From NCBI GenBank assembly GCA_964252035.1, contig OZ176200.1: a stretch of DNA of 64,000 bases. One strand, 5' to 3'. The notes below the pieces were generated by a model. It had not been told where the DNA came from. It ran no database searches and worked only from the letters and a program-made list of their open reading frames with translations. This stretch comes from Podarcis erhardii. Its lineage: Eukaryota. Positions 38,161 to 57,045 of this stretch are shown here, one piece after another (within the stretch, counting starts at the first letter, position 1; every line of letters starts with the position of its first letter). Position numbers and translations under genes: made by a program.

Positions 38161-41100
38161 CTACCTCTGTGTATTTATGTGCCTTTCTTTGTGAAGATGC
38201 AGGAGGTTTTCTTCACATGTAAGAGTTTTAGTGTCCCGGTGCAAAACACCCTTCTCTTTCAAGTGATCAGGCATTAATTGAATGGCTTCAGCTGAGGCCT
38301 TTATAGAGGAAGCAAAACCTTCTTCAGACCTTGCGATCCCAAGTGGCTCTCCGAGATGATTTTCTTTAGAGTTATTTGGGAAGGAATTCAAGACTGGACA
38401 TTCATTAGGGATGTCTAGACTCAAAGATTCACTAGCATAACTTAAATTATCTGGTATCATCTGGCTAAGAGAGCCAGGCATGCTGATGTCCATTTCCTCA
38501 CTTAAGAAAGAAAAGCCACTACATTCAGCAGATATTTTAGGTTCATCTGTTAAATCCAGGGCTTCGTATTTTACTTCCACTTCACTGTCAGGAAGATATC
38601 CCTGCTGTTCCACTCGTTCATCTTCAGGACAGGCTTCAAAAAAGCATTCAATATTTTCCGCAAAGTCTAGAGGGACTGGAGTGCTGGTCTTTTCTTCAAC
38701 ATATTTAGTTACCTCCCCACAGTCACTGTCATGGGAAGAAAGTGAGAGGTACGAATAAAAATCACCTTTTCTAAGTTGAATGGGCCTGTGAGAATGTTCT
38801 AGAACCTTTTCCCTGATCTGGGCTAATGAATGTGGAACAGCTGGTTCACTTTCAGGCTGAGACTTGTTCTTTAAGGCTGTTGAGGCCATGTCAATTATCT
38901 CCATCACAAAGTTGTGCACTGAACAATCCTCCTCATTTCTTTTATCAAAAGCAGCAGTTTCACAGCTACAACAGGAATCACTACAGCCAGCTGATGCATT
39001 TTCTTCTGCTTCATTTGATTTTAAAGATTCACAGCAATCTCCGCCATGTTCACTAATTCCTGTTCTGCTTTGCTGATCATTTGGCAGCGATTTTGGTAAT
39101 GCCATATCTGAACTTTTCATATCCGAGTCAAATTCTGTAAAAGGTTTTATAATAGAATGGCCTTCAAACTGAATATGTTTTTTATATTCTTTCTGAGAGC
39201 TGGATATTTTTGACAATTGAGCTGGCTCTTTACCATCCATACGTGAATCATCCGAACTATCAGTAAATGCTTCACAGATACAACATTCATTTTCACTTCC
39301 TTTACTAAGTGGGCTAACATTCATGGCAGCAGTTGAAATTTGAATATGTTCTTCCTTTGGACTTTCTTGTGTAATAGTAACATTTCCATTCTCCATGTCA
39401 TCCACAAAGTGATCTTTGGAAACTTGAAAGCCATCATTTTTCATTTGCCTTTTTGTCCCTGACTCATCATGGCTCTCTGATGTGTTCTTACTGTTGCCAT
39501 TATTTTTTGAAAGCTTGCGTATGGAATCATTCAAGAATTTTTCAATGCTCAATGAATCTTTTGCTTTCAAAGTCTCATTACTTCTTAAATTCTTACAGCC
39601 CTGGATTTCATCATCCAGATTGCACTTTCTCTTCTCCTTTGTCAGATTAAATTTTGGTCTGATCCAAGTGTAGAGTTCATTCTTTATGTAGTCAAGTCCT
39701 GAAATTAAATTGCAGTCTTCATAAATATCCTCATCAGTTGCAATACTAGAATCATCATCTTCATCTTTAATGCCTAGCTCTTCCTCAGTCAAGGTGAGAG
39801 TAGAACTTGATAGCAAATCACTATCATCTTCATCATCAGTGCAAGCGGAGGTACAGGAAACATTAACAATCATGCTAACGTTGACATCGCTCTCATCAGC
39901 TACCGACCGACTGAGGTGTTTTCTGAATGATGCATTTGAATCTGGTGCTTTATTTCTGTGCAGTACAATATCTTCAGAGCACAAAGACAGGTCATCGCTG
40001 CTGCTTAGCTCAGTGAGAGAAGCCGGTGAATCTTCATTGATAGAAGACGCAATATCCAATGACAACTGGCCAGCCAAGGACATTCTTTGAGAAGTGCTTT
40101 GGAGTGTGATATCAGAGATGCTACGCTTTATTTTTTGGTCTAAAGGGCTCTGGATATTTTCCAGACGATTCAAAAGGTCTAAGGTCCTTTTGCTAAGTTC
40201 CCCAACTGAATCACTACTTCCACTTAGGTCTCCAGAGCCATTGCAACTAAAAAGATCTTCATTGCTTTTGTAGGGTGTTAGCCAACTCTCCAAGGATGTG
40301 CTACGATGAAGCCCATCTCCACTTCTAAAAACAGTCGAGCCAAACAACTCATTTGTCACCGAAAGGGAGTCTAAAGAAGAGCTATGAGATAAAGTTGGGC
40401 ACAGCTTTGCATTTGTTGGGTCGCTCAGTTTCTTCAAATCCTCCACAAATTCACAGCGTTTGGGGTCTCCATCATCCAAGTTGGTTGAGAAAGCAATCTC
40501 ATCTGTAGATACAAGTGGCTTGAACTCTAAAGGTTGATGTTCCGATTTCAAGGGGACTTTATCAAAATAAAAGCCATGAAGCAAACTACCCTGCTTATGT
40601 GCTTTTTCTGAGTTTGATTGTTTCATTATGATTGGTAGCTTGAATTTGGAACCCTGAAGGTAAGAATAGTCATAAAATGTAAAGACATTGTGTTTTCCTT
40701 GTTGCAACTCTTCTGAACCCTCAGAGCCCTGTTGGGCGATGCTGCCCAGGCTTTTAGCTCTGTCGCTGGACTTTGACTGGGAAGTATTTAAGAAATTAAA
40801 ATGGATCTCCCCATCCGCTTGCTTTAAATTTTGTTTTATCACATCAACTATATTCCCTAACTGGGAATCTGAAATGCTAGTCACAGAATTATCCTGCTTT
40901 CTATCAGTATCATTTTGCAAATGGACATCAGGATTTTGGATAGCTTCTGCCTCACTTCCATTGACTGTTTTATTCTGACTGTCAGAATGCCTACTTACAT
41001 TTCCGCTGTGATACATATAATTCTGTGGGCTTGTCAAAGTGGTCCTGCCCATTAGTTCTGGCAAATGTTTGGTTGGTGACAACAAAGAGTTCTTATCCAC

Positions 41101-41490
41101 ATGCTTCTTTAAAGTGTCCAAGTGTGTAAGTGTGGAGGATTTGGATGTCTTTTTCATTAGAGAGATATTATTTTCCCCTGATAGCTCTACATTGTGAAGG
41201 CTGTACACTTGGTAGACCTGTGGAACTGGAGATGCTGTAATGCTTGGGCTGCTGAGGCAATTTTCATGTACAGTGGGATTTTCCTCCTGTTTGGGACAGT
41301 CATTATTACCACATGCTTCATAGGGAGAGTTCAGTTTTGTGTCATCTTGCTTCAGTTCTTGATCAAGCTCATTGAATTCCTCATTAACGCTAATCAACGT
41401 ATTACTTATATCCATTTCATCCCATTCTAGTGCATCTTCATTTGTACCATTCAGCTCCATTAAGCTTGGATCGATAACATTCAGGGATTC
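38161..41490 (-). CDS. AKAP6: AKAP6 large last coding exon (1109 aa + stop; equivalent to human exon 13)
   Basis: 1099-aa ORF in the track plus 10 upstream codons (ESLNVIDPSL) back to the acceptor tttctctgtttttaacag|GAATCC. Contains AKAP6 signatures EDALEWDEMDISN, YQVYSLHNVEL, FTFYDYSYLQGSK, SKRTLDLLNRLENIQSP, DDEDDSDLLSSSTLTLTEEEL, HRPIQLRKGDFYSYLSLSSHDSDCGEV, KTLTCEENLL. TAG at 38163-38161. Confidence 0.97.
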   Translation of the reverse strand, partial: ESLNVIDPSLMELNGTNEDALEWDEMDISNTLISVNEEFNELDQELKQDDTKLNSPYEACGNNDCPKQEENPTVHENCLSSPSITASPVPQVYQVYSLHNVELSGENNISLMKKTSKSSTLTHLDTLKKHVDKNSLLSPTKHLPELMGRTTLTSPQNYMYHSGNVSRHSDSQNKTVNGSEAEAIQNPDVHLQNDTDRKQDNSVTSISDSQLGNIVDVIKQNLKQADGEIHFNFLNTSQSKSSDRAKSLGSIAQQGSEGSEELQQGKHNVFTFYDYSYLQGSKFKLPIIMKQSNSEKAHKQGSLLHGFYFDKVPLKSEHQPLEFKPLVSTDEIAFSTNLDDGDPKRCEFVEDLKKLSDPTNAKLCPTLSHSSSLDSLSVTNELFGSTVFRSGDGLHRSTSLESWLTPYKSNEDLFSCNGSGDLSGSSDSVGELSKRTLDLLNRLENIQSPLDQKIKRSISDITLQSTSQRMSLAGQLSLDIASSINEDSPASLTELSSSDDLSLCSEDIVLHRNKAPDSNASFRKHLSRSVADESDVNVSMIVNVSCTSACTDDEDDSDLLSSSTLTLTEEELGIKDEDDDSSIATDEDIYEDCNLISGLDYIKNELYTWIRPKFNLTKEKRKCNLDDEIQGCKNLRSNETLKAKDSLSIEKFLNDSIRKLSKNNGNSKNTSESHDESGTKRQMKNDGFQVSKDHFVDDMENGNVTITQESPKEEHIQISTAAMNVSPLSKGSENECCICEAFTDSSDDSRMDGKEPAQLSKISSSQKEYKKHIQFEGHSIIKPFTEFDSDMKSSDMALPKSLPNDQQSRTGISEHGGDCCESLKSNEAEENASAGCSDSCCSCETAAFDKRNEEDCSVHNFVMEIIDMASTALKNKSQPESEPAVPHSLAQIREKVLEHSHRPIQLRKGDFYSYLSLSSHDSDCGEVTKYVEEKTSTPVPLDFAENIECFFEACPEDERVEQQGYLPDSEVEVKYEALDLTDEPKISAECSGFSFLSEEMDISMPGSLSQMIPDNLSYASESLSLDIPNECPVLNSFPNNSKENHLGEPLGIARSEEGFASSIKASAEAIQLMPDHLKEKGVLHRDTKTLTCEENLLHLHKERHINTQR
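38869..38922 (-). other. AKAP6: PKA-RII binding amphipathic helix (SVHNFVMEIIDMASTALK)
   Basis: Hydrophobic residues at helix positions 1,4,5,8,9,12,16 fit the AKAP consensus; matches the recalled mAKAP RII site VHNFVKEIIDMASTALK. Confidence 0.85.
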
Positions 41491-43216
41491 CTGTTAAAAA
41501 CAGAGAAATAGAATAATCAGTTAAATCACAAACAGTACATCCCACCTCCATAACTGAAAGTCAATACATAGTTCCTTACTCCTTGTAAAAAGCCCATTTC
41601 TCATCAGTTTTGCTATGCTGCATAAAACAAGATATAAATTACTGAAATACAATAAATAACAGTAAAGAGCAATAGGTAAAGTTCAGAGTGTGGACATAGA
41701 AAAGCTCATTCAGATTCTATCTTAGCTATGAAGTTCACTGGGCATTGGGCTGCTAAACTAGAAATCTAGCAATAGCGGTAAGTTCAACAGAATCCCTCAT
41801 ACCTGCTTAACCAAGCATTAAAAACAGCAGTTCCTTCTTTCTCTAGAATCTAGGGGTCACCATGCACCATAAACTCCAGCTCGTCTAAGCTTCAGCCTAT
41901 TCTGCCTCGTCCAATTAGTGGCTCCCAAACTCAAGGTTGAGGCTGCTGGTATTGGATCTGGTGAGGTGCCAATCTGCAGTGTATTTCAAGGACTCAACTG
42001 TCTGTCTCCCCACCCATAGCTACAAACAGGATCAGCACCACAAACTCCTCAGGAAACTGGTGCTAGTTTTAGGATGCCTAGGATTATCTGTGTAGAAGAC
42101 AAGATGAGGTAGGGTTTTTTTTGTTTTGTTACAATTGCAGCTGGAGAGCCAAGGTTAAACTTCCCCTACTGCGTGCTGTGGTCCCACTCAATGCCCCTCC
42201 TGCCCACTCCACAACCCAGTATGCTTCAAAGTAATAAATTTAGTGCCATATCTAGTTTGGCTTTTAGAGACAGGGAGTGACTATTCTAACTATAACCATG
42301 TAACAATCTGAGAACGACAGAGGAGACTGTAGAATCCCCTTCATGCTCAGATACTAGGCCAGTACTGAACAGTCAACCCAATGTATAACCTACCGTACAT
42401 GTTTTTGGTTTGTAATACAATATGGTGGTAATAGTATAATGCTTCTCGTGGCAGCCATGATGTCCTGAGCAACACCACACTAAAAGAGGAAGTCTCAGCA
42501 TGATTGCTGATGTCCTGAGATATGTGGCTACCTCTGTCAGTTTAGCCAGGAAGTCTTTCTTAAACAGAAGAATGACCAGTACACCAACAGAATTGCTAGT
42601 ATGCCCCCATTCCCCCAACATAAAATACTAACATTTCAACCTGGCTTTATCAAGGGAATTTCCAATCTGGAGGCCAAATGCTACACAACCCAAACTGGAA
42701 GATAGACTTTGGGTTATGTACAATACACTGAGCATTAGTAACAACAATTATTCAAAAGATTATCTATTATCTGAATGTGAAAGCTTATCTGAATTGTAAA
42801 TGTATGGGAGGCCAAGTGAAAAAGTAATATTTTAAAAGTCTATAGTATTTTAGATAGGGAAAATGCTTATATCCTGACTTTCTGCCTTAATATGAGGTTA
42901 GTCACCGCTATCCATTCCTCCTTGAGGAAGATGCAACAGACCTCTTGACACGTGCAAGAGCTCTACTAGAAGACTCTTTGTAAGTGATGGTGGTGGAAAA
43001 GAAATGGTGTTTTTTTGCAGCCATCACAGTCATGGGGTAGACCCTCCAGCAGCCTTTAGTCAGTGTTCAGTTGGATTAGCTTTGCTATCACACCTAGTGG
43101 ACATCTTGCCATTCATCACCTAAGCTCCACAGAAAACCGTTGAACTTAACCAGCAGGAAAGGACTCTCAGAAGTAATTACAGCAACTGCACAATCTATTT
43201 ACCCATTCCAGAGGTG

Positions 43217-43562
43217 CAGGGGCGGAGGAAGGGGACGGGGCGGGGGTCTGCCCTGGGTGTCACCCCTCAGGGGGTGACAAAATGCTGAGCGGCACTCACC
43301 GCGGGGCCTGCAGCACACCCAAGCCACACATCTCTCCTGGGAGTGACGTGGTGGCTTGGGCACCTGCAGGCTCCATGCTGCCCAAATGGTCTGCCTGCCG
43401 CCTCCCCATCAGCTGTAGGGCAGCTGAGTGGGAGGAGATAGACAGACTCCTTGGAAGCCCCACGAAGCGTCCTGCCCCAGGTTGCCCTGCCCTGCAGGCA
43501 GTTGGTCCTGCCCCTGGGCACGTGCGCCACCCCAGGCACCCAATCGGCTTGCTCCACCATTG
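43217..43562. mobile_element. hAT non-autonomous element, 346 bp
   Basis: Imperfect 15-bp TIRs (11 of 15) CAGGGGCGGAGGAAG / CTTGCTCCACCATTG; perfect 8-bp TSD CAGAGGTG at 43209-43216 and 43563-43570. Confidence 0.9.
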
Positions 43563-43643
43563 CAGAGGTGTCTTCAAGGGATTTGCCAGCCAAGGCACCA
43601 GAAACATCCTGCTAAACTATCAGGAAACCACCTGGAGTTACCT

Positions 43644-43806
43644 TAGCATCTGCTTTGCGTTGCATGTGGAAGTTCTTCAGTTCAACCCCTGGCATTTCTA
43701 GGCTGGGCTAGGAATGTTGTCTGTCTGAAGCCCTGGAGAGCTTCTGCTAGTCAGTGTGGACAGTACTGAGTTAGATGGACTTAGTGTCTGACTCAGAATA
43801 AGCAGG
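43644..43806 (+). mobile_element. tRNA-Ala-derived SINE fragment
   Basis: agcatctgctttg...ttcaacccctggcatttcta...ccctggagag...gacagtactgagttagatggac; same family as 34356. Confidence 0.65.
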
Positions 43807-46094
43807 TCTTTGTGGCTAACGCACCATCATGTTATCTGCCCCTGACAAAGGAACTACACCAGGTTTCTAACACAAAGCACCAAATTCAGAGTGTTCTGTA
43901 TTATGTGGGTGGGGCCAGATATCAACTGAGACAGACTCGTGGTTGTGAGGGAGGCATGAAAATCATAAGCCACTCCCAACAAGGGACCTTAGCGTGGATG
44001 AGATTCCTGGGGACACCCAACCTGGGCGTTAATGTTCATCTGTTATACAAGTTCTTATAACAGCTCCTTTGTATAGAGTATACCCAACTCTGCTGAATTT
44101 TTATTTGAATTTCCATTTGTTTGCTTGCTGATAAAAGCAGTATTAATGACTGGTTAGTATGACTAATGAATGTGAAAGACTTTAGTTGTAAAAGCAATCC
44201 ATCAGTCGTCTAATCAAATACTACATTAATTTCATATATTGCCTGTGCTGACATTGCTCTGGGAAACTGCTGAATAATGAAGCAAGACGGTAGGGGGAAA
44301 ATTGTTGCCTTCCTATGAAATTGTCGGTTTTATGTATACAACATTTAAAGCTAATCTGATGAAGCCTTCCCCTCTTGTTTTTAAGATGTATATTCAACTG
44401 TGAAAGAAAAGAAGAAAGGCATTTCTTGGGGGGGGGGGGGGCTTTTCAAAGGATGTGGTGCAATGCAATAGAAAAGATGGGAAATTGCTCCTATCCAATT
44501 TCCCTATCTGACCTTTTAACTGGACACTTTGCAGTAGATGGGACTGCATGACACATGAGATGTCTTCTAATTCTGGGATACTGGAATTCTATTGTTTAGT
44601 GAAGCAAAGCTCCAAAGGGCTATAAGTTCTTAAACCTTCTACATAAAACTTCCATGCATACAGAGACATCACTGAAGTTTTCTCCATATTTCAAAATGCA
44701 TACCAAGAGTAACTAATGTCTTCTTTAAGATTTGAAGGGACAGGAAACTAGCTACAGACTCCATAATTTTGTGAACCTGCAGAACCCACCCGCTTCTTAA
44801 ATATAAAACGCTTGTCACTTTCTGGCAAGGAAGATAACATTGCTGCTGTAAATCAGCTTTTGCCTGCTTCATTTATTCTGCACATCATGCAGATCCCACA
44901 GCAGAACAGAAACAATGACATAACCTCAACTCATTTATTTTAATTGTGGGATCACTTATTTCAAAACTTACTTTTTGTCACTTAACTTCTCAGAGTTTTA
45001 CATGGGAAATTAATTAATTTCAGTAGATCTACCCTGAGTAAAAATTCATTGAACACCACCCACTGGGTTGTAGATCCCAGGATCTGCTGAAAGAAAGGTT
45101 CTCCTCCTTCTGCAGCCAGCTGAAAATTTTCTCCATAGTGTTGAGCAAAGCAGGGGCTTCCAAAATGGAGTGGCAGGTTGCAGGTGGGACAAGGAATATT
45201 GGAATAGTAATATTCCAATAAAGATGCTTTTATGTCTTGACAGAACAGACCTGTAGCATAAACACCTCATATGCTTTTACAGGACAATTAACAAAGAGTT
45301 TTGGTGGTTGGAGCAACTACCTTTTCTTTTGCTTACACTAGTTGTCAGCTCTGAACGACTGGATAAACCATTGTGGAAATGAAGCAAAATGAATGAAAGA
45401 AGCCATCCCCCACTTCAAAGAATGTATGAACCACAATGAAAAACAAAAATGATTTTGTATTTGAAAAATGCCAGCATGCCAGTTACTTCTTCTGAGGGAA
45501 GTAATCATGTTTACAGTGCCCATTTCACCTCTGCAGCCCTCATGTTTTTGTTCTAAATGGGTCTCCTTGTGTTGCAGCCAAACAGAGAGCTATCCTCTTT
45601 GCACAACACCTACACCTCATCATTAATAAGCAGCAACTGTAAAAGGACATTCACGCTGCAACATTTTTGGGTCCACAAATGTGTATAAATACGGCACTTT
45701 ACTATGGCTCTCTAGAGGCAAGAGCAATTAGATTCATATACTTACTGTAATTAAAGTTAAAGCAGAAGCTAATTAGCAATGTTGTGTTTACTTTTCTTTA
45801 AAGAAAATAAAGATCCTAGAGTCAGACACACAATATATATATTTTTAAATTTAATGATTGCAGGTACCCACAACTATAATTCAGTCCTTATATTAGTTTC
45901 TTCGCTTGTTCATAGCCCTTCCTAGCATTTGTTGGTAGAAAATGTGATGGAAATCACTCTAGCTTTAAAGGGAAGTAGAGGAGTCATTTTTATGCTGTGA
46001 GATACGATGAGGTATATGTTCTACATTTCCCCCCTAAATCAATTTTCTTATTGAAAATAATTAGCCTTTTGAGCTCTTGACAAAGCATGGCTCC

Positions 46095-46252
46095 AACCTT
46101 GTATTGAGCTTTAAGACAGGACAGTGGTCTGTCTAGGTTCAGTGTTGTCTGTACTATACTAGCTGGGTTTCAGACAGGAGTCTTTCCTAGTCCAGGGATT
46201 AAGCTTTGGGCTTCCTTCATCCTAAGTATCTGTTCCACCACCAAACTATACC
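46095..46252 (-). mobile_element. Degenerate tRNA-Ala-type SINE
   Basis: Reverse-complement similarity to the 43644 copy (gtctgtctaggttcagtgttgtct...gagtctttcctag). Confidence 0.45.
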
Positions 46253-46723
46253 CACATCCTTGTGAAAGGTCAATTAAGAATGCTAGAGTCAGATGTCTGT
46301 AAACATGGTTGGATAGCACCATTGACCACAGCAGGGTGTCCACAACCCATGTGGTCTCAGTAAAGGATCTGATTTTGTGCAACTATTAGTGATCCTTCAT
46401 CCATTGCATTGAGGCACATCTTATGATAAGAAACACAAAGATAAAAGGGCATTTGAGCAGCAACTGGGAATGCTGTGATGTTCAATATGCAAGCTCAAGG
46501 AAGAGAAAATCCCATTTCCTTGTCTATTTAGAAAGAATTTGATGAGCCATTAGCTGGGTTCCCTATTGCATTGATTGTCCCTCCCCCACTCCTCAACACC
46601 CCCAATATCCAAAGTTGAAAAAGCAAAGACAGCTTAATTTTCAACTTATATTTATTTCACATGAATCAAGAGAAAACCTGGGACATTAAAACACCATTTA
46701 TAGTATTGTAACCAGTGCTGGTA

Positions 46724-46852
46724 AGGTTACCAGACGTCCCTGTTTCCCAGGGACAGTCCCCGGATTTACAAATCAGTCCCCTGACAAAATCCATCTATTT
46801 AATAGGAAGTTGAAAAGTGTCCCTGGATTCATTGAGAAAAATCTGGTAACCT
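46724..46852. mobile_element. TA-flanked MITE nested in the hAT 5' terminus
   Basis: Perfect TIR AGGTTACCAGA (46724-46734) / TCTGGTAACCT (46842-46852), with TA on both sides. Confidence 0.88.
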
Positions 46853-46938
46853 TAAGGAAGGGGGTGCGGGGTGTGTGGTCTGCCCCGGGTGTCATCACTG
46901 AGGGGGGGGGTGTGACAAAATGACAAAAATATGAGTTT

Positions 46939-46940
<2 letters not shown>

Positions 46941-46986
<46 letters not shown>
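46941..46986. repeat. (AAT)15 microsatellite
   Basis: Direct reading. Confidence 0.95.
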
Positions 46987-46991
<5 letters not shown>

Positions 46992-47076
46992 TTGGGCTCA
47001 TGAAACTTTTTAGTTCAGTCAACAAACGTAATGAAACACGGCTGGCACAAGGTGCCACACTGCGGGGGCCAGCACT

Positions 47077-47218
47077 CTGTGAGGTGAGTGGGGCTGAAAG
47101 ACTTCAGAGAAGTGTGACTAGCCCAAGGTCACCCAGCAGCTGCATGTGGAGGAGCGAGGAAGCGAACCTGGTTCACCAGATTACGAGTCTACCGCTCTTA
47201 ACCACTACACCACACTGG
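47077..47218 (-). mobile_element. Squam3 SINE 5' part nested in the hAT element
   Basis: Minus strand ccagtgtggtgtagtggttaagagcggtagactcgtaatctggtgaaccaggttcg...gggtgaccttgggctagtcac, matching the recalled Squam3 head and CORE. Confidence 0.85.
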
Positions 47219-48487
47219 TGTGGTGGTTTGGGCGCCTGCAGGCTCCGCAGCGTGGGGCTTGTGTCTGCCCACCGCCTCTTTCTCAGCTGCTCTCCAGCTG
47301 AGGGGGAGGCGGCGGAGAGGCTTGATGCAGTGCGCCCTGCCCCCAGCTGCAGGACGCATGTGCCACACTGGCCACCCAAGCGGCTAGGTACACCACTGAT
47401 TGTAACCCCCATTTGGCTAAAATGCAGCAACCCACATTTGGCTAAAATGGAAGAATAGGGAGCTTCCTGTTTGATTACAGAATTTGTTTGATACTGCTGT
47501 AAACTGATTTTTCAGGGGCACATAGAGCTGTATAAGAAAGGTATGGGTAGAAAACCCTCTTTGCATGAAAAGAACTCTGCTCATGCTTCTCTGATTCCAA
47601 CTCGTAATTTCTTGCAAGATACAGTTTGTCACCAGAATGATTCATTCCAGGGCTCCAAGCATAAAGGTCTGCACTGGGAATTATGTGGCGCGATGACAAA
47701 ATCAATTTATCCATCTACTACCCTTTTTGGATCCTAGCCCATGCCAGAGACTCATTTGGTTAACCTTTAAAGCCCCTTGCAAATGTTCAAGGGAAGGAAC
47801 TTTCAAAATTACCTACTGCAGAAAAAACACACACATGGGTGTCCTGTTTAAAATTTTGGTCACTTAAACAATTCAAAGAAAATTTCACAATTTCCACAAA
47901 TTGCGTGGGGCGTACCCATTTAAGTAAGTACTGGGTCTTAAGCACTGTTAACACTCTGACTTCAAAAAAGGAAGGACTGTGGAAAACAGTGGTTACTTTC
48001 TGGTCTATCACATTTTAAATCAATTTAAGTGACAATCACTGGTTTACGTGTCAAATCGTATAGGAAGAGGGGATTTATTTGTGTTGATAACATCTGGAAA
48101 CACAGCACATTTTATTGGAAGTTGCTTTTGCTACTCTATAGTTTGCTTTTCATCTGTCAAGGGGTTACATGACAGGTATGTATGCGTTTGTGTGTTCAAG
48201 CTTCAATGTCATTTTGGTCTCAACATTGCTTCAGGTGCAATATATTCATTCCCCCTTCCAAACAAGTACAATAAAGGATATTCACAGGAAGAAAAAGGAA
48301 CAACGAAAAACAACAACCACCAAACAAGATATCTAGATGTGCCTTAAAAACACATTTATGCATGACCAGTTGTTCAAGAATGTGAAGGGGGTATATCCTA
48401 TTCAAATGTGTATCCTATCAAGAGCAATACAACACGTAAATATCCTCACACTGGGATGGATTCAGATTTTGCTTTCCGTGAACAGGC

Positions 48488-48966
48488 TGTTACTGTTGGA
48501 AGGGAGATGACTTTTGCCAATTCACTCTTCCTCTTTAGCTCCTCAACTCACAGGCAGGATTTGGGGTTGAGGACTGCAGCAGGGGATCAGCAAAAGGACC
48601 GTCCCCTGTCTCTGTGGGCAATATCGTTCACTCAGGCCAGAGCTGTTCCATAGACAGCAGTCTGAAGCGATGAAGAAACTAAAGTATGGACTAAAGAGCA
48701 ATCCAAATTAGAGGGCAAACCAGAAGGCAGAACTGGAGAAAAAAAACCAAGAATCACAACCAAGAAGCAATCCAGGTCAGAGGGAAAACTAGAAGGCAGA
48801 TCCGAGAACAAGTCAAGAGTCAGCACCAACCAGCAATACACACAGGGCTTGTTGTTCAAGCAAAGTTCTGCTGAGGCAGGAAGTCCTCTTATGCAAGAGC
48901 CAATGGCCAACCTGGGTAGTCTGGAAGGTTCATCCCTGAGAAGCTCCAGAGACACTGCTTGCCACA
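48488..48966. mobile_element. Possible Gypsy-type solo LTR
   Basis: Starts tgttac, ends gccaca; internal 34-bp direct repeats at 48698-48731 and 48767-48800 (29 of 34). No TSD found. Confidence 0.35.
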
Positions 48967-48995
48967 TGGGGTAAAAGGGTCAGCAGTTTTATGTA

Positions 48996-49221
48996 CAGTG
49001 GTACCTTGGGTTAAGTACTTAATTCTTTCCAGAGGTCCGTTCTTAACCTGAAACTGTTCTTAACCTGAAGCATCACTTTAGCTAATGGGGCCTCCTGCTG
49101 CTGCCGTGCTGCCGGAGCACGATTTCTGTTCTCATCCTGAAGCAAAGTTCTTAACCTGAAGCACTATTTCTGGGTTAGCAGAGTCTGTAACCTGAAGCGT
49201 ATGTAACCTGAGGTACCACTG
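48996..49221. mobile_element. Tc1/mariner (Tigger-like) MITE, 226 bp
   Basis: TIR CAGTGGTACCT / AGGTACCACTG, TA TSD; near-identical to 28207-28432 and in the same orientation. Confidence 0.92.
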
Positions 49222-51138
49222 TATTTATTTGTTGCACCCACCCTGGGTATTGCAACAAAGGGCAGGATAGAAGTTTGTTTTAGAAAAAAAAAAAATAAAA
49301 AAATCTACAAAGGAGCCTGCTTATGTATCCCAATCTCCTTGGTGGAACAAAAGAGGGTCAGTTGTATGACTAAGATAGTATTCTGAGGCCAGTTATCATA
49401 GTTCTTTCTTTTCCCATGTTATTGTAATTACCTTGTAAGCCTGAAGGCAGAGCCATATTGCTTGTTTCAGGTGCTTGCCGTATTGCTTATAGAAACTGCC
49501 TGTATATATTTTTTTAAATGTTGCCTTCCATCTTGCAATTGCTCTAAGTGTGCTCTAAGTGTGGAACTGCAAAATATAGGGGCCAGGAGCTAACACTACT
49601 TACGAAAGAAAACTGACGAGCAACAAGAGCCTGGGCTTGAATACATCCCTCTGCTTGCAAGCAAGTGATTTTGGTAATAGAAATGACCAAAATCGCACAG
49701 CAGTTCCAGTACTACAACCCCCAATGCTATAATTGTAGCGAAACACACACACACACACACATACGGCCTATGAGGTGCAATATGTCTATAGCAAATGAGG
49801 CACTAACAGCTAATAGCAACAGGGGAGAAAAATATCAGTATTAATGGCACTGATACAATTTCCCATTATCTAAGTGTATCAGGTCTGTGTGTGCACTAAA
49901 TGCGATATATTTTTGTACAATCTGTAGCATTCTGGGGATATGTTCATGGCTCCTAGTTCCATGATGAATTACAGTGTCCCCCCCCCCCAATAGTAATAAT
50001 AACAGTACTACTACTAATAATTTTGAACTGCAAAAATTCAGCATCTTTCAACATTGCTGAGTAAACTGACTGCATAAGCGATGACTCCATAAACTTTAGG
50101 AACTCATTTATTATGTTGCTAGATCAGACACTGCATTTATTCACACAGTGCATCTATAAAACTGAGCTTTCATTAGAGTCATGGGGAGGCCCAAGCCTCT
50201 TTCTCTTCACTTGAGAAGGTGAAGCTCAAGAAGATAATTAAACATGAAACAATGAGGAGGCTTGCTGGGTAAGCAGTAGTGTGAAAACAGTTACTCCTCA
50301 CAAAAGAGGGGAAATTAGCTGGCTGGATAAAAGAGGAAGTGTCAGACTGGAAGACTGGAAGGAGGACTCTGCCAGCATAAGCGGGGAGAGCTCCATGCAT
50401 CATTAATGCCATTTTTTTAACACTTAAGCTCCACAGCTGTCCAAGTCCAAACACATTCAAATGCCACACATTCAGAGAAATGAATATGCTGTGTTGAAAT
50501 TATTTCCCTTAAACTTCCCATGTTCATCTTTCACTCGTTGCAGCCAACTGCCAAATGTAGCAGGCTCTCAGTGGAGCATCTTTGTTTACAGAGTCAGTGC
50601 AAACAGAGCCTTCTAAAGAGATTCAGTGTCGTCATTATATTATAACAAACACATCATTTTTTTACATTGTAAACACCAATATTTCCAGGAACAGAAAGTT
50701 TGGTTTGATTTTGATGCTTTCAAACTGTGCAGTTTCATTTGTGATGTGCTGTTTCCTTTCAGAACTTCCCTTCTCCAGAACAGTGTTCCCTGAAGCAGCC
50801 AGGATTCCCCCCCCCCTTTTTTGGCAGAGGTTCAGGTGCACACAGTGCCAAAAGAAATAGAATAAACAAACACTGCTTAATGCAGCTGGCTAGGTAATTT
50901 ACATATTACTGCACACCAAATATGGAGACCTGAATATGGATTAGAACTCCTGTGATGATACAAATGCTGTATAGATAAAGAAAATGAAAAATTCTACATA
51001 ACCATCAATTTACCTTTCTCGGGAGTGACATTTTACTGTGAAATATATATAGAAACACATAGGAACATTAAAATATATATGGGGAAATAGGTACACTGTA
51101 GATGTTTGTGTATATGCTTATGTCAGTCCATCCATCTA

Positions 51139-51141
<3 letters not shown>

Positions 51142-51179
<38 letters not shown>
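51142..51179. repeat. (AC)19 microsatellite
   Basis: Direct reading. Confidence 0.95.
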
Positions 51180-51181
<2 letters not shown>

Positions 51182-51830
51182 AGGCAACAATACACAATTC
51201 TTATTTAGGCATCCTCTCTCAAAAGTGTATTTTTTCCATAGACAAATGCTAAAGTGCAAAGAAAATAAATATCAAAATAGCTAACATATGCTGGACTGTT
51301 TTGGCATATTATATTGTCACAATAATTCTGAGTGTTTACTTGATGCAAACTTAGCTAGATGCTAAGATGTCCTGCTATACTAGGCAATGGAAGTGAAAAT
51401 ACAGGAACCATTTACTCATGTTTTAGTACACTGGTATCTGCTTTCAGAAGTAAGAGCTTCAAAGTATCCTCAATTTTGTTGTTAATGTTTAAACATACTG
51501 TGAGCATACCCCTTGGCACAGATTAAAATCAAAACTGAAGTTATACAACTGAGATCAATAGAACTCACCCCAAAGCAAGTGTGTGGGAGGGTAGCAGTTT
51601 TTCTAGCAAAATTCAAAATCAGATACATTCAAAACTGTAATTCAAAACAATTAAACTGAAAATTAGAACCTATGACCTTTTATGCAGGTATTGCTATCTA
51701 ACCGACTCTCTCACAGTATTAACAAACAATAGACTACAAAAACAGAGACTCTTACAGTCTAAATAAATGCAGTGAAGTCTCATTTATAGACAAATCATTG
51801 TCAGCATTATAGAGAAATGTCATTGTTATT

Positions 51831-51925
51831 TAGGCTGCAATCCTAAACCCACTTATCTAGGAGTAAATACATTAGAATTCAATAGGACTTAGTTCTGAGT
51901 AGATGTGGTCAGAATTGTGCTGTTA
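51831..51925. mobile_element. Short palindromic MITE (family of 33337)
   Basis: taggctgcaatcctaaacccactta...gaattcaataggacttagttctgagtagatgtggtcagaattgtgctgtta. Confidence 0.6.
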
Positions 51926-52106
51926 ATTTAGTATATGTGTGTATATATAGATATATAAATTGAATCAATTTTATCTTCCTGCTTATTTAAAAATGTAACA
52001 GCCTGTACTGTTTTCTCCATACAAACTGAATGTAACAGGTATACCAATGGGATAATTCAGCATTTTAAATCCAGTTAAGATTAAGAATAATTGGTGAAAC
52101 TGGTAC

Positions 52107-52274
52107 ACCTGCATCAGGACCACTGGACACCTTCATCTGCCCCAGCTGCAACAAAACATCTCTCTCTCATATCGGTCTCTACAGCCATAGCAGGCGCTGT
52201 AACTCTCTAATGGTTTGACTTAGCCACAAAGGTGCACCCTTCCATTGTCTCCCAAGACAGACAGATGCCAACAA
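52107..52274 (+). mobile_element. RTE-clade LINE 3' end
   Basis: Translates TFICPSCNKTSLSHIGLYSHSRRCNSLMV*, the C-terminal zinc-finger-like motif of RTE ORF2, then the tail ccattgtctcccaagacagacagatgccaacaa. Confidence 0.75.
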
Positions 52275-54084
52275 AATAAAATGTGGAATAGTAGTCATTG
52301 TAGTAGCAGCAATAGTCAAAGGCCTAAAACAAGGTCCCAAGAAGGTAAATGAAAAGAATTCAAACATTTTATAGACAAACATTCTGATCCAGAATGATAT
52401 ATAAATTAATAGAAAAAAGTTTCTACTTGTGGATTGACTCTACTGTGGGCAAAACAGGGTTCTGAGGTTAGAAAGAAGTCTCATTTTTAAAGTGTTTTCT
52501 GTGCCCCTCCCTGAAAAAATCCTGTGGACACACATGCTCGTGGAAGGCTTATATCAAGTATCTGGTATTAATGGAACATAAATGGAGCAAGTAATTTCCA
52601 CAGGATGCTGACTGTGTTTTCTTTCCTGATTTTCACACCAGCTTGCAGAATGAGGTCTATAGTAAATTCTTATGCTACTTCTTTTGCCATTTGTTCTTGC
52701 TTCACAAAATAATTATTTAGTTCGCAATTAGGCCATTTCAGATGCCAAGTGGTGTTAGTATTGAGTGGTGATGTGTATCAAAACAGCAACGTGATAACTT
52801 GTGCATCATTCTTCTATAGGTGATTTTTCAACATGTGTAATGAGCATCATGCTATTGATTTTTTTTAAGCATTTCACCAATGGGAAAGGCAGAGAACAAG
52901 GACACTTCATTGAGGGCCAACTTTATGAACAACTGTTTTCTTTCCCTAAAAGTGTCAGGGAAGCACAAAAGAAGAAGTGGATGAGGATATCAGCTTAGCA
53001 GGAATGCAGCATTTTAGCACATTTTTGTTTCCAGGTTTGCTTTCCATTCATTAAAAAGAATCTGGATTTTTTCCCAACCTCCTCTCAAATGGTACTTTCA
53101 GCAACCTCTTTGACTCCTAAGAATAAGCATCCAAGAAAAAGGCTTATGGAAAGCGAATGCTTGGTGTTGTTGTTTTTTAAAGTGAGCTGTCTCACCACCG
53201 CAGATTTTTCCAAGTTCTTACAACTCTAATTAAAATGTGGTAATTGGTTATGTTACCTCAATTACCATGATGCATGGACATTGATGCAGAGTGACACCAA
53301 TTGAATCCCTTGGGTGTTATACCCTAAGGCCATCCCATTTATTGTGGCCTTATTATTTTCAATTATGTGGCTGGATGTACAGCATACTTTCAAAGCCAAT
53401 GCACATGGGAATTGAGCTGGACACATAGTACAGTGTACTTACAGAAGCGTTCGGCAGCAGAGGAAAATTTGCATGATGGAAAGGAAGCATTTCTCAAATC
53501 CACATAAATAATCTAAGTCAGAAATATTGCAGAGAGCAAGGAACAGACTTCAATCAGGCAGGCATCCCAAACCTAAATGATACCAACTCAAAATGTGGCA
53601 ACTAACAGCTTCTTCAGTTGTGTAGGGGGGGAAAATGAACAGTGGCCTCTTATATGTGACAGATTTCAAGGCAAGGACAGTGAAATCACAGATAATGAAT
53701 GGAAAAGAACGACAGTCTCTCTTTTGGAAGAGCTGTTTTGCCTAAACCCTCATTTATAACCCTGGCAATTCTGCTTATATGAGCAGCTTCTACAAGGAGA
53801 AGGTTTTTCCTGGGAAAGGAGTGGGACCAGGGGAAACCGCTCAGACCTGGGTGTAGAAAGCATTGATCAAGTGGAAAACTGCTTGGACCTGAGCTTCCTA
53901 TGTATGGGACAAGCAGCACTGTGGACGAGCTGTCAATCTTTTTGTTGGCAGCTGTGACCATGAGTATATTTTTACTAGCTTAGGTTGGTTAACCAACTGC
54001 TTCTGTTCCTAGGGATGAATACTATGGTTACATCCAAACTGGATGACTATAACAAGCACTAAACAGGGCCGCAGGGACAGAATT

Positions 54085-54311
54085 TGGGTAGAGTCGCTAC
54101 TAGGAGAACATTACACCAAAACCACATCCATGCCATACATTTAAAGCACTATTATACAACTTTCCCGCCATGGCTTTCCCCAATGAATTCTGGGAACTTT
54201 AGTTTGTTTAGAGTGCTGATAGCTGTTAGGCGAGCCCTATTTCCCTCTCTGAGTTACAGTTCCCAGAGTTCCCTGGGAAGAAGGATTGATTGTTAAACTA
54301 CTCCTGGAATT
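54085..54311. mobile_element. Degenerate squamate MITE
   Basis: Contains ccatggctttccccaatgaattctgggaactttagtttg...gagttacagttcccagagttccctgggaag, a common lizard non-autonomous DNA element (recalled). Confidence 0.45.
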
Positions 54312-56199
54312 CCATTTCATAGGCAGGTAGTCTGAATTATTCACAAATCCTTTTCACTTAATCAAATGAATGAACTAAATGAAATAAACTTTATGCAAAT
54401 AGACTTGACACATGACTGGATGGGGAAAGTGCATTGGGGAGTGCTCTAGAATTTTAAGGAAAAACCACAGCAATTCAATGCCAGCTTTCATATTGACATA
54501 CACTGACAATATGAGAAACAAACTGTCTTCTGCTATCAGTCCTAGAGAAACTTTATGTTTTGGGGGAAACTGTGGATATTGTAAAAAGATCTTTTAAAAG
54601 GCAGCAAAAAGTTCTTTTAAAAAGCTACTAATATATATATATATATCTCCAAGCTCTTTACAAATAATTTCAACATAACCCCCGAGCATGAATAATACGT
54701 TGCCATTAGGGACCATGAAAAGGAAAATGGTCAAAGGAAAATGCTGATAGATGTATTAAAAGAACAGAAGAGGGAAGCAACTCCTGAACTTCCGTAACAC
54801 ATCTAATCAACCAGGCCAGCATTTGCACTGTCAGTGACTCTTGCCAACACCGAGTCTGATGCCATCAGAGATGTAAACACATCCCATTTGTTTTCATATA
54901 TTACAGTATATTGTGGACAACCTCAAATAAAAAAACTATATACTTGTTTCCCGGGGATACCATTCATGTGCCAAGACTGGCACACCATCAAGTGCAGAGA
55001 GATAGGCAAAGCAGAGAAAGCAATCTTGGGATCAGCCCAAGAAATGACTACACAGGAACTGAATGAAAGGAAATGTTGTAGCATGCCAGCTTGGAATTGG
55101 GAGACGGCAGGGGAGGGAGAGAAAAAGAATGCAAGAGAGACTAGCTAATTTCAGTTCCAACTACAGCATCCTGATTCTAAGAACTCTTTTTATCATCTAA
55201 GAAAATGGAAGATTTGGAAACTAGCCCTGTTTTCATATGGAATGCATATGTTCGTAGCAAGAGGCCTCCCCAAAACGAAAAATAAAACCTATATGGAGAG
55301 TTCTTAATGGCTGCCATTTCTCACCAGTTGCATTCCCTACCAGGTGAAATGTAATTCAGTCCAGCAAAGAAGTCTAGGTTACCCCAGGCAAAATGGGAAC
55401 AAAGCAGTGTGGAGCTTGTGAAGTTCTCTGGCATCCTGACATCAAGAAAACACACAGTGCTTTTACACTCCCCCTACCTCACCTCCCAATCGATTCCTAT
55501 CCAAATAGAGCCACAAGACTACTTCACTCCTGCTGCAAGAGCAGCACTAGCCTTTAATTAGCACGTAGCAGCTTATTTAGAGGAACTGCAGCTAAACCCA
55601 GCAGCAGCAGCTCGCATGGCAAAGATGAGAGTAGCTCCGGCTGCAGTGGCGCTTTTACACGTGTGTTCAGCAGCCTGCAGAGCTTTTTCACAGTTGCCGC
55701 TTGCCTCTGCTTCAGGCAAAAGAGAACAGTCAGCACCAGAAGGTGAAAAAGTGAGAGCACAACACAACAAAAACAATACAGCTTTTTGCCAACTGCTGCT
55801 ATTTTAAGAGGAATAAAGCTTCTGGATCAGATGGGCAGTCTCTGCACCACTACCCTGTAAAGAAAGGACCAGAGCAAGGTCCTGATTTGGCTCTAATAGA
55901 GGGATGGGGTCCAACAAAGGCACCAACACACAGCTGCCCCTGTGGTGTTCTATTTATGTCATGAGCTCCTTTAGGAATGCTGCTATAAAAGCGAGACACT
56001 TTTCAATCTGTCTGTTGCAAGCAATGTCAGAATTCCACAGGTCTTCAACGAAAGGTTGGACGAGCATGTATTGAGGATGCTTTAAATATTGGATAGCTTG
56101 TCTCAGGACAGGCTGAAGTAGATTACATGTAGAACAATTCCAACCTTAATATTTTGAACCCATACAAAACACTTATTTCCATAATAAAAAAAATCCTTC

Positions 56200-56275
56200 C
56201 AATAGCTCCTTAGAGACCAACTAATTTTGTTATTGGTATGAGCTTTCGTGTGCATGCACACTTCTTCAGGTACCA
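56200..56275 (-). mobile_element. Penelope-like element terminal (pLTR) fragment
   Basis: The hammerhead is followed by aataacaaaattagttggtctctaaggagcta, resembling the recalled reptile PLE end (AATAAA...TTGGTCTCTAAGGTGCTAC). Confidence 0.62.
56234..56275 (-). ncRNA. Minimal type I hammerhead ribozyme motif (Penelope-type)
   Basis: Minus strand TGGTAC-CTGAAGA-A-GTGTG-CATG-CACAC-GAAA-GC-TC-ATACCA: core CUGANGA (56269-56263), 5-bp stem II, GAAA (56247-56244), palindromic AGCU in place of stem III, cleavage triplet CUC, stem I UGGUA/UACCA with one C-A mismatch next to the core. Confidence 0.75.
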
Positions 56276-56794
56276 TTATTTCCATAGTACTTATTCCATG
56301 CTCTCTAACTTTGTTTGGCAATAAGGTTGGAATTGATGGGCTAAAGCACATAGATGCAGACTAGTGCTGGACAAACGGGATGTTCAGAATAAGTCCAGGG
56401 GCTGCTTTATAGAGATCTAGACAAATGATTGAAGTGTATCATATTACAAACAACAATACATGTTTTGGTCTAATTCAGAAAACCATTGACTACCCTTATC
56501 TGCCATTTATTTCAATTCCACAAAATCCATTCAGTGCCTTAAAAGGGTCAGAATCTGTGTGTTTAAAAACAGAACTCGAGTTTGTGCAACGTGTTCATAG
56601 CCCATTAATCAGTTGGTTCCATTGACAGGATCATTATATGTTTGGGGAGAAAGGTTCAGAAGCCTAATTATTTGGCTCGCTGTTGCACCTTCAGTGAAGA
56701 TATCAAGAGGAACAAGGAAGGATTTTAAGGTGCTGGGGAAATGCCCCACGTGAATGCATTTGAAGGGAAGGAACATCAAGCAGGTGTCACTTAC

Positions 56795-57010
56795 GGAATG
56801 CTTTGCCAACTTCTTCTGCAGTCTAGTTTGCCACTGGACAGCTTGCATGACGATGGCTTCCCACCTCCTTTCAAGATTTACAATTATCAGCTGCATTGAC
56901 TGGTGATCTGCGTTCAGGTTACAGGTATCCTGGTCATTAAGGAGGTGCTGGCACAAACGCAAAACTGAGCCCACGCCTCGGCGTCTCTGTTTAATTTCGC
57001 AGCAGAGGGA
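56795..57010 (-). CDS. AKAP6: AKAP6 internal coding exon (end of third spectrin repeat; equivalent to human exon 12), phase 0-0, 72 codons
   Basis: Minus-strand translation SLCCEIKQRRRGVGSVLRLCQHLLNDQDTCNLNADHQSMQLIIVNLERRWEAIVMQAVQWQTRLQKKLAKHS matches AKAP6. Acceptor ctgaccattcttctgtccacag (CAG at 57013-57011); donor TCC|gtaagt (intron starts 56794). Splices in frame to the exon at 41490. Confidence 0.95.
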
Positions 57011-57045
57011 CTGTGGACAGAAGAATGGTCAGTGTCAATGCACTT

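What the first reader, a model, noticed from the sequence alone, without database searches (positions are those of the whole stretch)
56234..56275. Hammerhead ribozyme motif sense to the AKAP6 pre-mRNA, about 520 nt inside intron 12
Seen: the minus strand reads UGGUAC CUGAAGA A GUGUG CAUG CACAC GAAA GC UC|AUACCA. All core nucleotides are present, stem II is perfect, AGCU replaces stem III, and the predicted cut falls between 56240 and 56239. Stem I has 5 pairs and a C-A mismatch at the core-proximal position. Established: Penelope-like elements carry minimal type I hammerheads that lack a stable stem III and work mainly as dimers through such palindromes, and an extra A between A9 and G10.1 occurs in an active viroid hammerhead (CChMVd). 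Inference: this 76-bp remnant is little more than the ribozyme and lies in host-sense orientation, so it could cut nascent AKAP6 RNA in cis or in trans with other PLE RNAs. It could equally be an inert fossil.
Basis: partly seen in the sequence, partly recalled or inferred. Interest (0 to 1): 0.85.

Follow-up and report, generated by a model that had tools for sequence, protein, structure and literature searches.

The report
Ordinary Penelope-type hammerhead copy in intron
The hammerhead ribozyme motif is real, but it is one 92-base copy of a jumping-gene family repeated many times in this lizard genome. It most likely sits inert in an AKAP6 intron rather than cutting the gene's RNA.

Summary
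The minus strand at 56275..56234 reads exactly as described, sense to AKAP6, and begins 519 nt into the 15.3-kb intron that precedes the gene's large exon. It is not chance: my minimal-hammerhead descriptor finds it once in the window and never in 300 shuffles.

- **Insertion.** It lies in a 92-bp insert (56275..56184) flanked by a perfect 11-bp target-site duplication.
- **Copy number.** Public reads and contigs pile up on this insert alone. Summed word depth is about 1.8 million against about 22 on the flanks.
- **State of the motif.** No letter of the 42-nt motif departs from what the family reads show. The "extra A" and the C-A mismatch are family features, not decay.
- **Family type.** The extra nucleotide, G10.1-C11.1 and the AGCU palindrome are the published hallmarks of Penelope-like-element (PLE) minimal hammerheads. 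The Anolis Poseidon_Ac element has the same architecture.
- **Rfam.** The hammerhead models do not score it.

Cleavage of AKAP6 RNA is unsupported. No RNA read came from this locus. Published monomers of this type are inactive, and Poseidon_Ac needs its own protein. There is no partner copy in 64 kb.

The scan has 110 notes in this genome that hold the words hammerhead, Penelope and ribozyme. Verdict: an ordinary, probably inert, 5'-truncated retroelement copy.

The parts
56184..56275 (-). 92-bp retroelement insert: hammerhead plus about 50 nt of downstream family sequence, ending in a T-run
   Evidence: Read and contig pile-up is confined to about 56183-56275. The insert is bracketed by an 11-bp direct repeat.
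56234..56275 (-). Minimal type I hammerhead motif: stem I 5' strand, CUGAAGA, extra A, stem II and loop, GAAA, GC, U, C17, stem I 3' strand
   Evidence: No alternative letter at 10% or more among family reads (table 3).
56239..56240 (-). Predicted scissile bond, 3' of C17 (56240) and 5' of A1.1 (56239)
   Evidence: Follows from hammerhead numbering applied. No enrichment of molecule ends here (table 6).
56248..56261 (-). Stem II with its loop, GUGUGCAUGCACAC. This is a perfect 14-nt palindrome and contains an ATG (56255-56253) that opens a 24-codon frame to the end of the insert.
   Evidence: The predicted extended-duplex dimer is -36.6 kcal/mol.
56241..56244 (-). AGCU palindrome (A15.1 G15.2 C16.2 U16.1) standing for helix III. 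It can only pair with a second copy.
   Evidence: Hallmark per PMC4209133.
56276..56286 (-). Upstream copy of the target-site duplication TATGGAAATAA
   Evidence: Exact 11-mers recurring at 80-130 nt occur at 4.6e-6 per position and distance in this window.
56173..56183 (-). Downstream copy of the target-site duplication TATGGAAATAA
56795..57013 (-). AKAP6 exon upstream of the intron (5' splice site GT at 56794-56793)
41491..56794 (-). 15,304-nt AKAP6 intron that holds the insert. The 3' splice site AG is at 41492-41491.
38161..41490 (-). Large AKAP6 exon, about 1,100 codons, downstream of the intron
   Evidence: It is 76% identical to Phrynosoma AKAP6.

Best explanation
A short, 5'-truncated copy of a very high-copy hammerhead-bearing retroelement of the Penelope-like (PLE) type was inserted by target-primed reverse transcription into an AT-rich site of an AKAP6 intron. 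It left an 11-bp target-site duplication.

In PLEs the hammerhead sits at the junction of the terminal repeat and the ORF, and reverse transcription starts a short way downstream of it. A heavily 5'-truncated copy is therefore expected to be 'little more than the ribozyme'. The template RNA was uncut at this hammerhead when it was copied, since the whole motif is present.

In the element's own life cycle, such motifs are thought to cut multimeric element transcripts as dimers or with help from the element's protein. At this locus the motif is a lone monomer without helix III and without loop-loop contacts. It most likely does nothing to AKAP6 RNA.

Shown here: the motif, the insert limits, the duplication, family membership, identity with the family's letters, gene and strand. 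Inferred: the PLE origin (by architecture and literature), the insertion mechanism, and inertness.
For: - **Motif is real.** Sequence as described. Descriptor gives 1 hit against 0 in 300 shuffles.
- **High-copy family.** In DNA contigs of a related organism (X11), flanks have word depth about 22, while 56229-56261 reaches 1.77 million. 2,900 contigs were laid, all within about 56183-56275. RNA contigs of two organisms and 287 raw RNA reads also land only there.
- **Motif matches the family.** No alternative letter at 10% or more inside 56234-56275. The family differs from this copy at 56202, 56207, 56225 and 56232 (table 3).
- **Insertion signature.** The 11-bp duplication sits exactly at the pile-up limits.
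- **Present in a relative.** Flank-anchored contigs of organism E run into the insert from both sides (56077-56234 and 56245-56780), so the insertion is shared (table 8).
- **Hallmarks met.** All four published hallmarks of PLE minimal hammerheads are met, and published monomers are inactive with dimers only weakly active (PMC4209133).
- **Anolis Poseidon_Ac.** The repeat-ORF junction of its consensus, joined head-to-tail as in a tandem copy, reads CUGAGGA-U-stem II-GAAA-CG-U-C|A, the same architecture. Its hammerhead cleaves only with the element's protein and leaves no RNA-seq ends, and reverse transcription starts about 111-118 nt into the ORF (PMC11167929).
- **No partner.** There is no second copy or family fragment in the 64-kb window.
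- **Energies.** Double-hammerhead dimer is -18.7 kcal/mol against 2 x -9.8 for monomers. Stem I pair probability falls to about 0.13 once 50-300 nt of flank are added.
Against: - The link to an autonomous PLE with an RT/GIY-YIG ORF was not shown. No full-length element is in the window and the genome could not be searched. The source could be a non-autonomous derivative.
- The sequence downstream of the hammerhead does not resemble Poseidon_Ac.
- Inertness is inferred. No RNA read from this locus was seen, so cleavage was not tested.
- Family RNAs are expressed on both strands, so partners for pairing in trans do exist.
- The motif carries 0 of the 4-6 differences from the family, while the other 50 nt carry all of them. 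Fisher one-sided p is 0.08 to 0.02. This is weak and biased by how reads were selected.
- Rfam hammerhead models do not recognise the motif.
Confidence: 0.8

Rival explanations
1. The copy is catalytically used. It cuts nascent AKAP6 pre-mRNA, either paired through AGCU with another family RNA in trans or helped by a PLE protein, and so lowers or modulates AKAP6 expression.
For: - The core is intact and identical to the family's letters.
- The motif is sense to the gene.
- Family RNAs are present in transcriptomes.
- Poseidon_Ac protein activates its own hammerhead in vitro.
- Retrozymes are under-represented in introns in Xenopus, which would fit a cost of genic copies (bioRxiv 10.64898/2026.07.22.740005).
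Against: - No locus-derived RNA reads, and no pile of ends at the cut site even among family reads at depth about 250 (table 6).
- Published monomers are inactive and dimers weak even at high Mg2+. No ends at the cut site were found in Anolis RNA-seq.
- A 4-bp intermolecular helix gives no predicted net gain.
- Stem I is mostly unpaired in context.
- The far more stable dimer is a non-catalytic extended duplex through the 14-nt palindrome.
- With this many copies in the genome, nothing singles out this one.
- From my own knowledge (Dye, Gromak and Proudfoot 2006): cutting an intron by an inserted hammerhead need not stop splicing.
Confidence: 0.05
2. The source was not an autonomous PLE but a short non-autonomous hammerhead element, retrozyme-like or SINE-like, mobilised by PLE machinery. 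The 92 bp are then a large part of a small unit rather than the tip of a 3-kb element.
For: - Copy number looks very high.
- Contigs in other runs show head-to-tail arrays of little more than the hammerhead, with periods of about 41-53 nt (table 5c).
- Vertebrate non-LTR retrozymes are reported as PLE derivatives with short units, mean 176 bp in reptiles, and many occur as monomers.
- Earlier scan notes describe mini-elements with two hammerheads in this genome (unchecked).
Against: - The family continues beyond both ends of this insert. One search, table 7 shows consistent loose-end sequences on both sides in X23, so the unit is longer than 92 bp.
- An ATG in loop II opens a frame, as at the ORF start of Poseidon_Ac.
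- This rival changes the name of the source, not the reading of this locus.
Confidence: 0.12
3. Chance resemblance: the motif is not a hammerhead relative at all.
For: The core boxes alone occur at chance frequency. Rfam models give no hit. The fold is not unusually stable (z = -1.43).
Against: The full descriptor gives 0 hits in 300 shuffles. The motif is the best-conserved part of a massively repeated, TSD-flanked insert. Four features not imposed by the core match the published family.
Confidence: 0.01
4. Exapted host element: a conserved intronic ribozyme or structure kept by selection in AKAP6, like the conserved intronic hammerheads of amniotes.
For: The insertion is shared with at least one related organism, and the motif has no differences from the family.
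Against: The organisms compared differ by only about 1% in the flanks (7 differences in 536 nt). Shared presence and an unchanged 42-mer are therefore expected without selection. There is no helix III, no loop-loop contacts, and no Rfam HH9/HH10 match.
Confidence: 0.02

Closest known systems
Minimal hammerheads of metazoan Penelope-like elements (Cervera and de la Pena 2014, PMC4209133)
   Same: - Type I with an open helix I of 5 pairs.
- Helix II of 5 pairs.
- An unpaired nucleotide between A9 and G10.1.
- A G10.1-C11.1 pair.
- No helix III, only a palindromic 15.2-16.2 (AGCU).
- Mostly dispersed single copies of large families, and reported in reptiles.
   Different: The paper names turtle and snakes, not lacertids. 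The link of this family to an RT/GIY-YIG ORF was not shown here.
Hammerhead of Poseidon_Ac, the Anolis carolinensis PLE (PMC11167929)
   Same: Same architecture at the repeat-ORF junction: core, one extra nucleotide, helix II, GAAA, a 2-nt palindromic pair, U, C, cut. A start codon lies inside helix II or its loop. Insertions go into AT-rich DNA, and reverse transcription starts a short way downstream of the hammerhead.
   Different: - Different sequence: CUGAGGA-U and ACGU against CUGAAGA-A and AGCU.
- Helix II has 6 pairs with wobbles, and stem I is shorter.
- The downstream sequence is unrelated.
- This insert ends in a T-run, about 70 nt after the ATG, not at an AC-rich loop at +111-118.
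Animal non-LTR retrozymes (tandem hammerhead units that give circular RNAs)
   Same: Same kind of type I hammerhead. They are thought to derive from PLE terminal repeats (bioRxiv 10.64898/2026.07.22.740005). The same family forms short tandem arrays elsewhere (table 5c).
   Different: Here there is a single hammerhead and no second copy within 64 kb. No unit can be excised or circularised.
[quoted passage not shown]
   Same: A hammerhead in an intron, sense to the host gene.
   Different: Those have a full helix III and loop-loop contacts, are single-copy and deeply conserved, and match Rfam models. This one has none of these.
CChMVd plus-strand hammerhead with an extra A after A9 (De la Pena and Flores 2001, as cited in PMC4209133)
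   Same: An extra nucleotide between A9 and G10.1.
   Different: That is a viroid ribozyme with three full helices. For this motif the PLE family is the nearer and sufficient precedent.

Membership tests
Metazoan PLE minimal hammerhead | Conserved core C3 U4 G5 A6 N7 G8 A9, G12 A13 A14, A15.1...U16.1, H17 | tested here: met
   CUGAAGA, GAAA, U, C17.
Metazoan PLE minimal hammerhead | [quoted passage not shown] | tested here: met
   A at 56262. Feature as listed in PMC4209133.
Metazoan PLE minimal hammerhead | G10.1-C11.1 pair closing a longer than usual helix II; short open helix I (4-5 bp) | tested here: met
   GUGUG/CACAC gives 5 bp. Helix I has 5 pairs plus one mismatch.
Metazoan PLE minimal hammerhead | No stable helix III; palindromic 15.2-16.2 | tested here: met
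   AGCU at 56244..56241.
Metazoan PLE minimal hammerhead | Member of a large consensus family of copies in the genome | tested here: met
   2,900 DNA contigs and summed word depth of 1.77 million on the motif, against about 22 on the flanks. The same stretch is in RNA contigs of other organisms.
Metazoan PLE minimal hammerhead | Full copies carry the motif in the terminal repeat of an element with an RT/GIY-YIG ORF | not testable with these tools
   There is no full-length element in the window, and no search of this genome or of a repeat library was possible. Only the analogy with Poseidon_Ac is available.
Metazoan PLE minimal hammerhead | Self-cleavage as a dimer or with element protein | not testable with these tools
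   This is a bench test. Nearest-neighbour energies give no gain for the dimer.
Rfam hammerhead families (Hammerhead_1, _3, _II, HH9, HH10) | Score at or above the family's gathering score | tested here: not met
   No hammerhead hit at gathering score, nor at E<=10 on 1.1 kb or 81 nt. This is to be expected if those models require a helix III, which this motif lacks (my inference; the models were not inspected).
Non-LTR retrozyme | Two or more hammerheads in tandem bracketing a unit | tested here: not met
   Only one motif and no other family fragment in 64 kb.
TPRT-type retroelement insertion | Target-site duplication at the limits of the repeat | tested here: met
   An 11-bp perfect duplication at 56286..56276 and 56183..56173, abutting the pile-up limits.

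The most novel reading that the evidence does not exclude
Sense-oriented intronic copies of this hammerhead family, this one among them, are switched on when PLE protein or abundant family RNA is present. This could happen in the germ line or in tissues where the element is active. They would then cut host pre-mRNAs, a retroelement-dependent, genome-wide layer of transcript cleavage that would also explain avoidance of introns.
Probability: 0.03. Interest if true: 0.55.

Novelty: new member of a known kind. Interest (0 to 1): 0.12.

Why it matters
On its own this locus matters little. It is one of a great many copies, and the kind has been described since 2014, including in reptiles and, biochemically, in Anolis.

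Its use is as a clean worked example.
- The TSD-flanked 92-bp copy shows what a maximally 5'-truncated insertion of such an element looks like.
- It shows that the template RNA was not cut at its hammerhead when copied.
- It shows that the 'oddities' of the motif, the extra A and the C-A mismatch, are family traits.

If sense intronic copies were ever shown to cleave host RNA, the question would be a genome-wide one, about orientation bias and end mapping. It would not be about AKAP6 in particular.

Tried and rejected
- **Rfam.** Run at gathering score on the whole window and at E<=10 on 1.1 kb and 81 nt. No hammerhead model scored, only noise hits (SNORD65, FsrA, CrcZ, 5.8S, MIR1222, S808, RMST_1).
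- **Partner copy or other family fragments.** Searched the window with blastn at word size 7 and with two family motifs at up to 3 mismatches. None found.
- **Relatives in public contigs.** The exact 30-nt pattern found nothing in metagenome contigs. A looser gapped pattern gave 52 metagenome and 2 viral loci. None passes the hammerhead descriptor, and the number is about what I estimate chance would give. They were rejected.
- **Naming the host gene.** Pfam and the ESM Atlas gave nothing useful. The protein search settled it.
- **Literature.** Lunse, Weinberg and Breaker 2017 on PLE hammerhead dimers is not held. I used the summary in PMC6765202.
- **Earlier scan notes.** Looked for a full-length PLE with RT in this genome. 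None.
- **RNA ends at the cut site.** Not testable. All 287 reads of X23 that were laid come from other copies, each continuing into sequence unlike this locus, and the unique flanks have depth 0.
- **Selection on the motif.** The 0 of 42 against 4-6 of 50 contrast is too weak, and biased by read selection.

Full report
**The observation.** In hammerhead numbering this gives:
- C3 to A9;
- one extra A;
- a 5-bp helix II closed by G10.1-C11.1 with a CAUG loop;
- G12 A13 A14;
- A15.1 G15.2 C16.2 U16.1 with no loop;
- C17, the scissile bond between 56240 and 56239;
- a helix I of five pairs with a C2.1/A1.1 mismatch next to the core.

The two core boxes alone are not remarkable: 7 matches in the window against 5.2 expected. 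A descriptor that also demands both stems, G10.1-C11.1, a paired 15.2/16.2, U16.1 and H17 finds this site only. It finds nothing in 300 dinucleotide-preserving shuffles.

**The Rfam check.** No hammerhead family scores at gathering threshold on the window, or at E<=10 on 1.1 kb or on 81 nt around the site. I read this as a limit of the models and not as evidence against the motif (my inference; the models were not inspected). Cervera and de la Pena needed a special relaxed descriptor with no helix III to find such motifs (PMC4209133).

**Host gene and strand.**
- The exon just upstream on the minus strand (56795-57013, 5' splice site GT at 56794-56793) translates to a peptide 93% identical to alligator AKAP6 residues 703-771.
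- The 1,099-codon ORF at 38161-41460 on the same strand is AKAP6: 76% identity to the Phrynosoma protein, with more than a hundred AKAP6 hits.
- tblastn shows that the two are consecutive exons.
- The intron runs from 56794 to 41491, 15,304 nt.
- The motif is sense to the gene. It starts 519 nt, and would cut 554 nt, inside the intron.
- The number '12' could not be checked. It is the intron before the large exon.

**What the stretch is.** I laid one raw-read RNA run, two sets of RNA contigs and one set of DNA contigs from related organisms on 55800-56780.
- In the DNA contigs the flanks have a word depth of about 22.
- The four bins from 56163 to 56294 reach 50 thousand, 620 thousand, 1.77 million and 310 thousand. 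2,900 contigs were laid there.
- The RNA sets behave the same way, with zero depth everywhere else.
- Loose ends cluster at 56183-56188 on one side and at 56267-56275 on the other.

The tool warns that summed depth is not a copy number, so I claim only that the family is very abundant. The window itself holds only this copy.

**The insertion.** Exactly at those limits the sequence carries a perfect 11-bp direct repeat, TATGGAAATAA, at 56286..56276 and 56183..56173. It brackets a 92-bp insert, 56275..56184. Exact 11-mers recurring at 80-130 nt are found at 4.6e-6 per position and distance in this window. This is the signature of a target-primed retroelement insertion into AT-rich DNA. The 'remnant' is therefore a complete insertion event of 92 bp, not 76 bp.

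Flank-anchored contigs of organism E enter the insert from both sides (56077-56234 and 56245-56780). The insertion is therefore shared with that relative. Its flanks differ by about 1.3%, 7 differences in 536 nt (tables 3 and 8).

**State of the ribozyme.**
- The table of alternative letters lists every position where at least 10% of the laid reads or contigs differ from the window.
- Inside 56234-56275 there is none.
- Outside it, the family almost unanimously differs from this copy at 56202, 56207, 56225 and 56232, and about half of it differs at 56213 and 56228.
- Hence the extra A, the AGCU and the C-A mismatch are what the family itself carries. This copy's hammerhead is unmutated relative to its relatives.
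- The contrast of 0 of 42 against 4-6 of 50 is suggestive at best, with Fisher p of 0.08-0.02. It is biased, because only reads at least 92% alike were laid.
- I do not read it as selection at this locus.

**Comparison with what is known.** Cervera and de la Pena 2014 list features that were not imposed by their search and that define metazoan PLE minimal hammerheads:
- large consensus families;
- the G10.1-C11.1 pair;
- a palindromic 15.2-16.2.

They also report a longer helix II and a shorter helix I, and motifs in turtle and snakes. All of these are met here.

The Repbase consensus of Poseidon_Ac from Anolis is given as a supplement of PMC11167929. Read across its repeat-ORF junction, with the two ends joined head-to-tail as in a tandem copy, it gives CUGAGGA-U-(6-bp helix II)-GAAA-CG-U-C|A. 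It too has one extra nucleotide and a palindromic ACGU, and its start codon lies at the start of helix II. The present copy has an ATG in loop II that opens a 24-codon frame to the end of the insert. The sequences are otherwise unrelated, so this is another family of the same kind.

That paper also shows that reverse transcription starts inside the RNA, about 111-118 nt into the ORF. A short stretch downstream of the hammerhead is therefore the 3' end of what gets copied. This explains why a heavily 5'-truncated copy is 'little more than the ribozyme'.

In this family the reads continue past the T-run into a stretch containing AGACCAACACGG (table 7). This may be the counterpart of the AC-rich loop. 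This copy ends earlier, in the T-run, which may correspond to the tail-less class of 3' ends. That last point is conjecture.

I could not show the link between this family and an RT/GIY-YIG ORF. No full element is in the window, and neither this genome nor a repeat library could be searched.

**Does it cut AKAP6 RNA?** There is no direct evidence either way.
- All 287 reads of the raw RNA run that were laid continue into sequence unlike this locus.
- The unique flanks have depth 0 in about 1.9 billion letters read.
- Among the family reads, at depth about 250, no position qualifies as a place where many molecules begin or end.
- Twelve reads carry adapter sequence right next to 56239. They contain A1.1 and the ribozyme upstream of it. 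That is not the end expected of either cleavage product, and they come from other copies. I leave this as unexplained.

The indirect evidence is against activity:
- A single minimal motif showed no detectable cleavage, and dimers and trimers cleaved weakly, mostly at unphysiological Mg2+.
- The Poseidon_Ac hammerhead cleaves only when the element's protein is added. No RNA-seq reads begin or end at its cut site.
- This locus has no second copy within 64 kb.
- The nearest-neighbour energy of the double-hammerhead dimer (-18.7 kcal/mol) is no better than two free monomers (2 x -9.8).
- The 14-nt palindrome formed by helix II and its loop gives a non-catalytic extended duplex of -36.6.
- With 50-300 nt of flank on each side, the pair probability of helix I drops to about 0.13, while helix II stays near 0.9.
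- From my own knowledge: minimal hammerheads without loop-loop contacts are slow at cellular Mg2+, and cutting an intron with an inserted hammerhead does not necessarily prevent splicing (Dye, Gromak and Proudfoot 2006).

**Context in the scan.** A word search of the scan's earlier notes returns 110 notes in this genome that hold the words hammerhead, Penelope and ribozyme. The eight shown include copies sense to other genes' introns. They are unchecked first-reader notes. They agree with the read pile-up in saying that such motifs are commonplace here. Nothing sets the AKAP6 copy apart.

**Verdict.** The assignment to PLE-type minimal hammerheads is well supported by architecture and family behaviour, with the ORF link untested. 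This is a new member of a known kind and of low interest by itself.

Noticed in passing
window 56219-56273 as laid, table 5c (contigs of runs X11, X18, X26): Elsewhere the same family forms head-to-tail arrays of little more than the hammerhead. Contigs go back from 56269 to 56234 with 5 letters between, from 56273 to 56239 with 13, and from 56269 to 56219 with 2. That gives periods of about 41-53 nt. Such arrays could form double hammerheads.
   Followed up: no
window 56239 (table 7, run X23): Twelve RNA reads from other copies of the family carry Nextera adapter directly next to 56239, one nucleotide 3' of the predicted cut. This is not the end expected of a cleavage product. It may be a tagmentation hot spot or duplicates.
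   Followed up: partly
window 56248-56261: Helix II plus its loop is a perfect 14-nt palindrome. Two copies are predicted to prefer an extended duplex (-36.6 kcal/mol) over the catalytic double hammerhead (-18.7). This would be a family-wide property.
   Followed up: partly
window 28230-28440 and 48990-49225 (+): Two copies of another interspersed repeat, with internal repeats of GTTCTTAACCTGAAGC. It looks SINE-like and is unrelated to the hammerhead.
   Followed up: no
window 47000-47458 (+): A 152-codon ORF inside the AKAP6 intron, antisense to the gene, with no Pfam match. It is probably not a gene.
   Followed up: partly
window 55554-55733: An earlier scan note (s1-224459) proposes an unannotated alternative last exon of AKAP6 here. 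The RNA runs laid covered only 55800 upward and show no depth in this part of the intron.
   Followed up: no
runs X26-X36: RNA contigs of at least six further coded organisms hold about three of the 18 sampled 31-letter words of 56140-56340. Part of the insert is therefore near-identical in transcriptomes across several species.
   Followed up: partly
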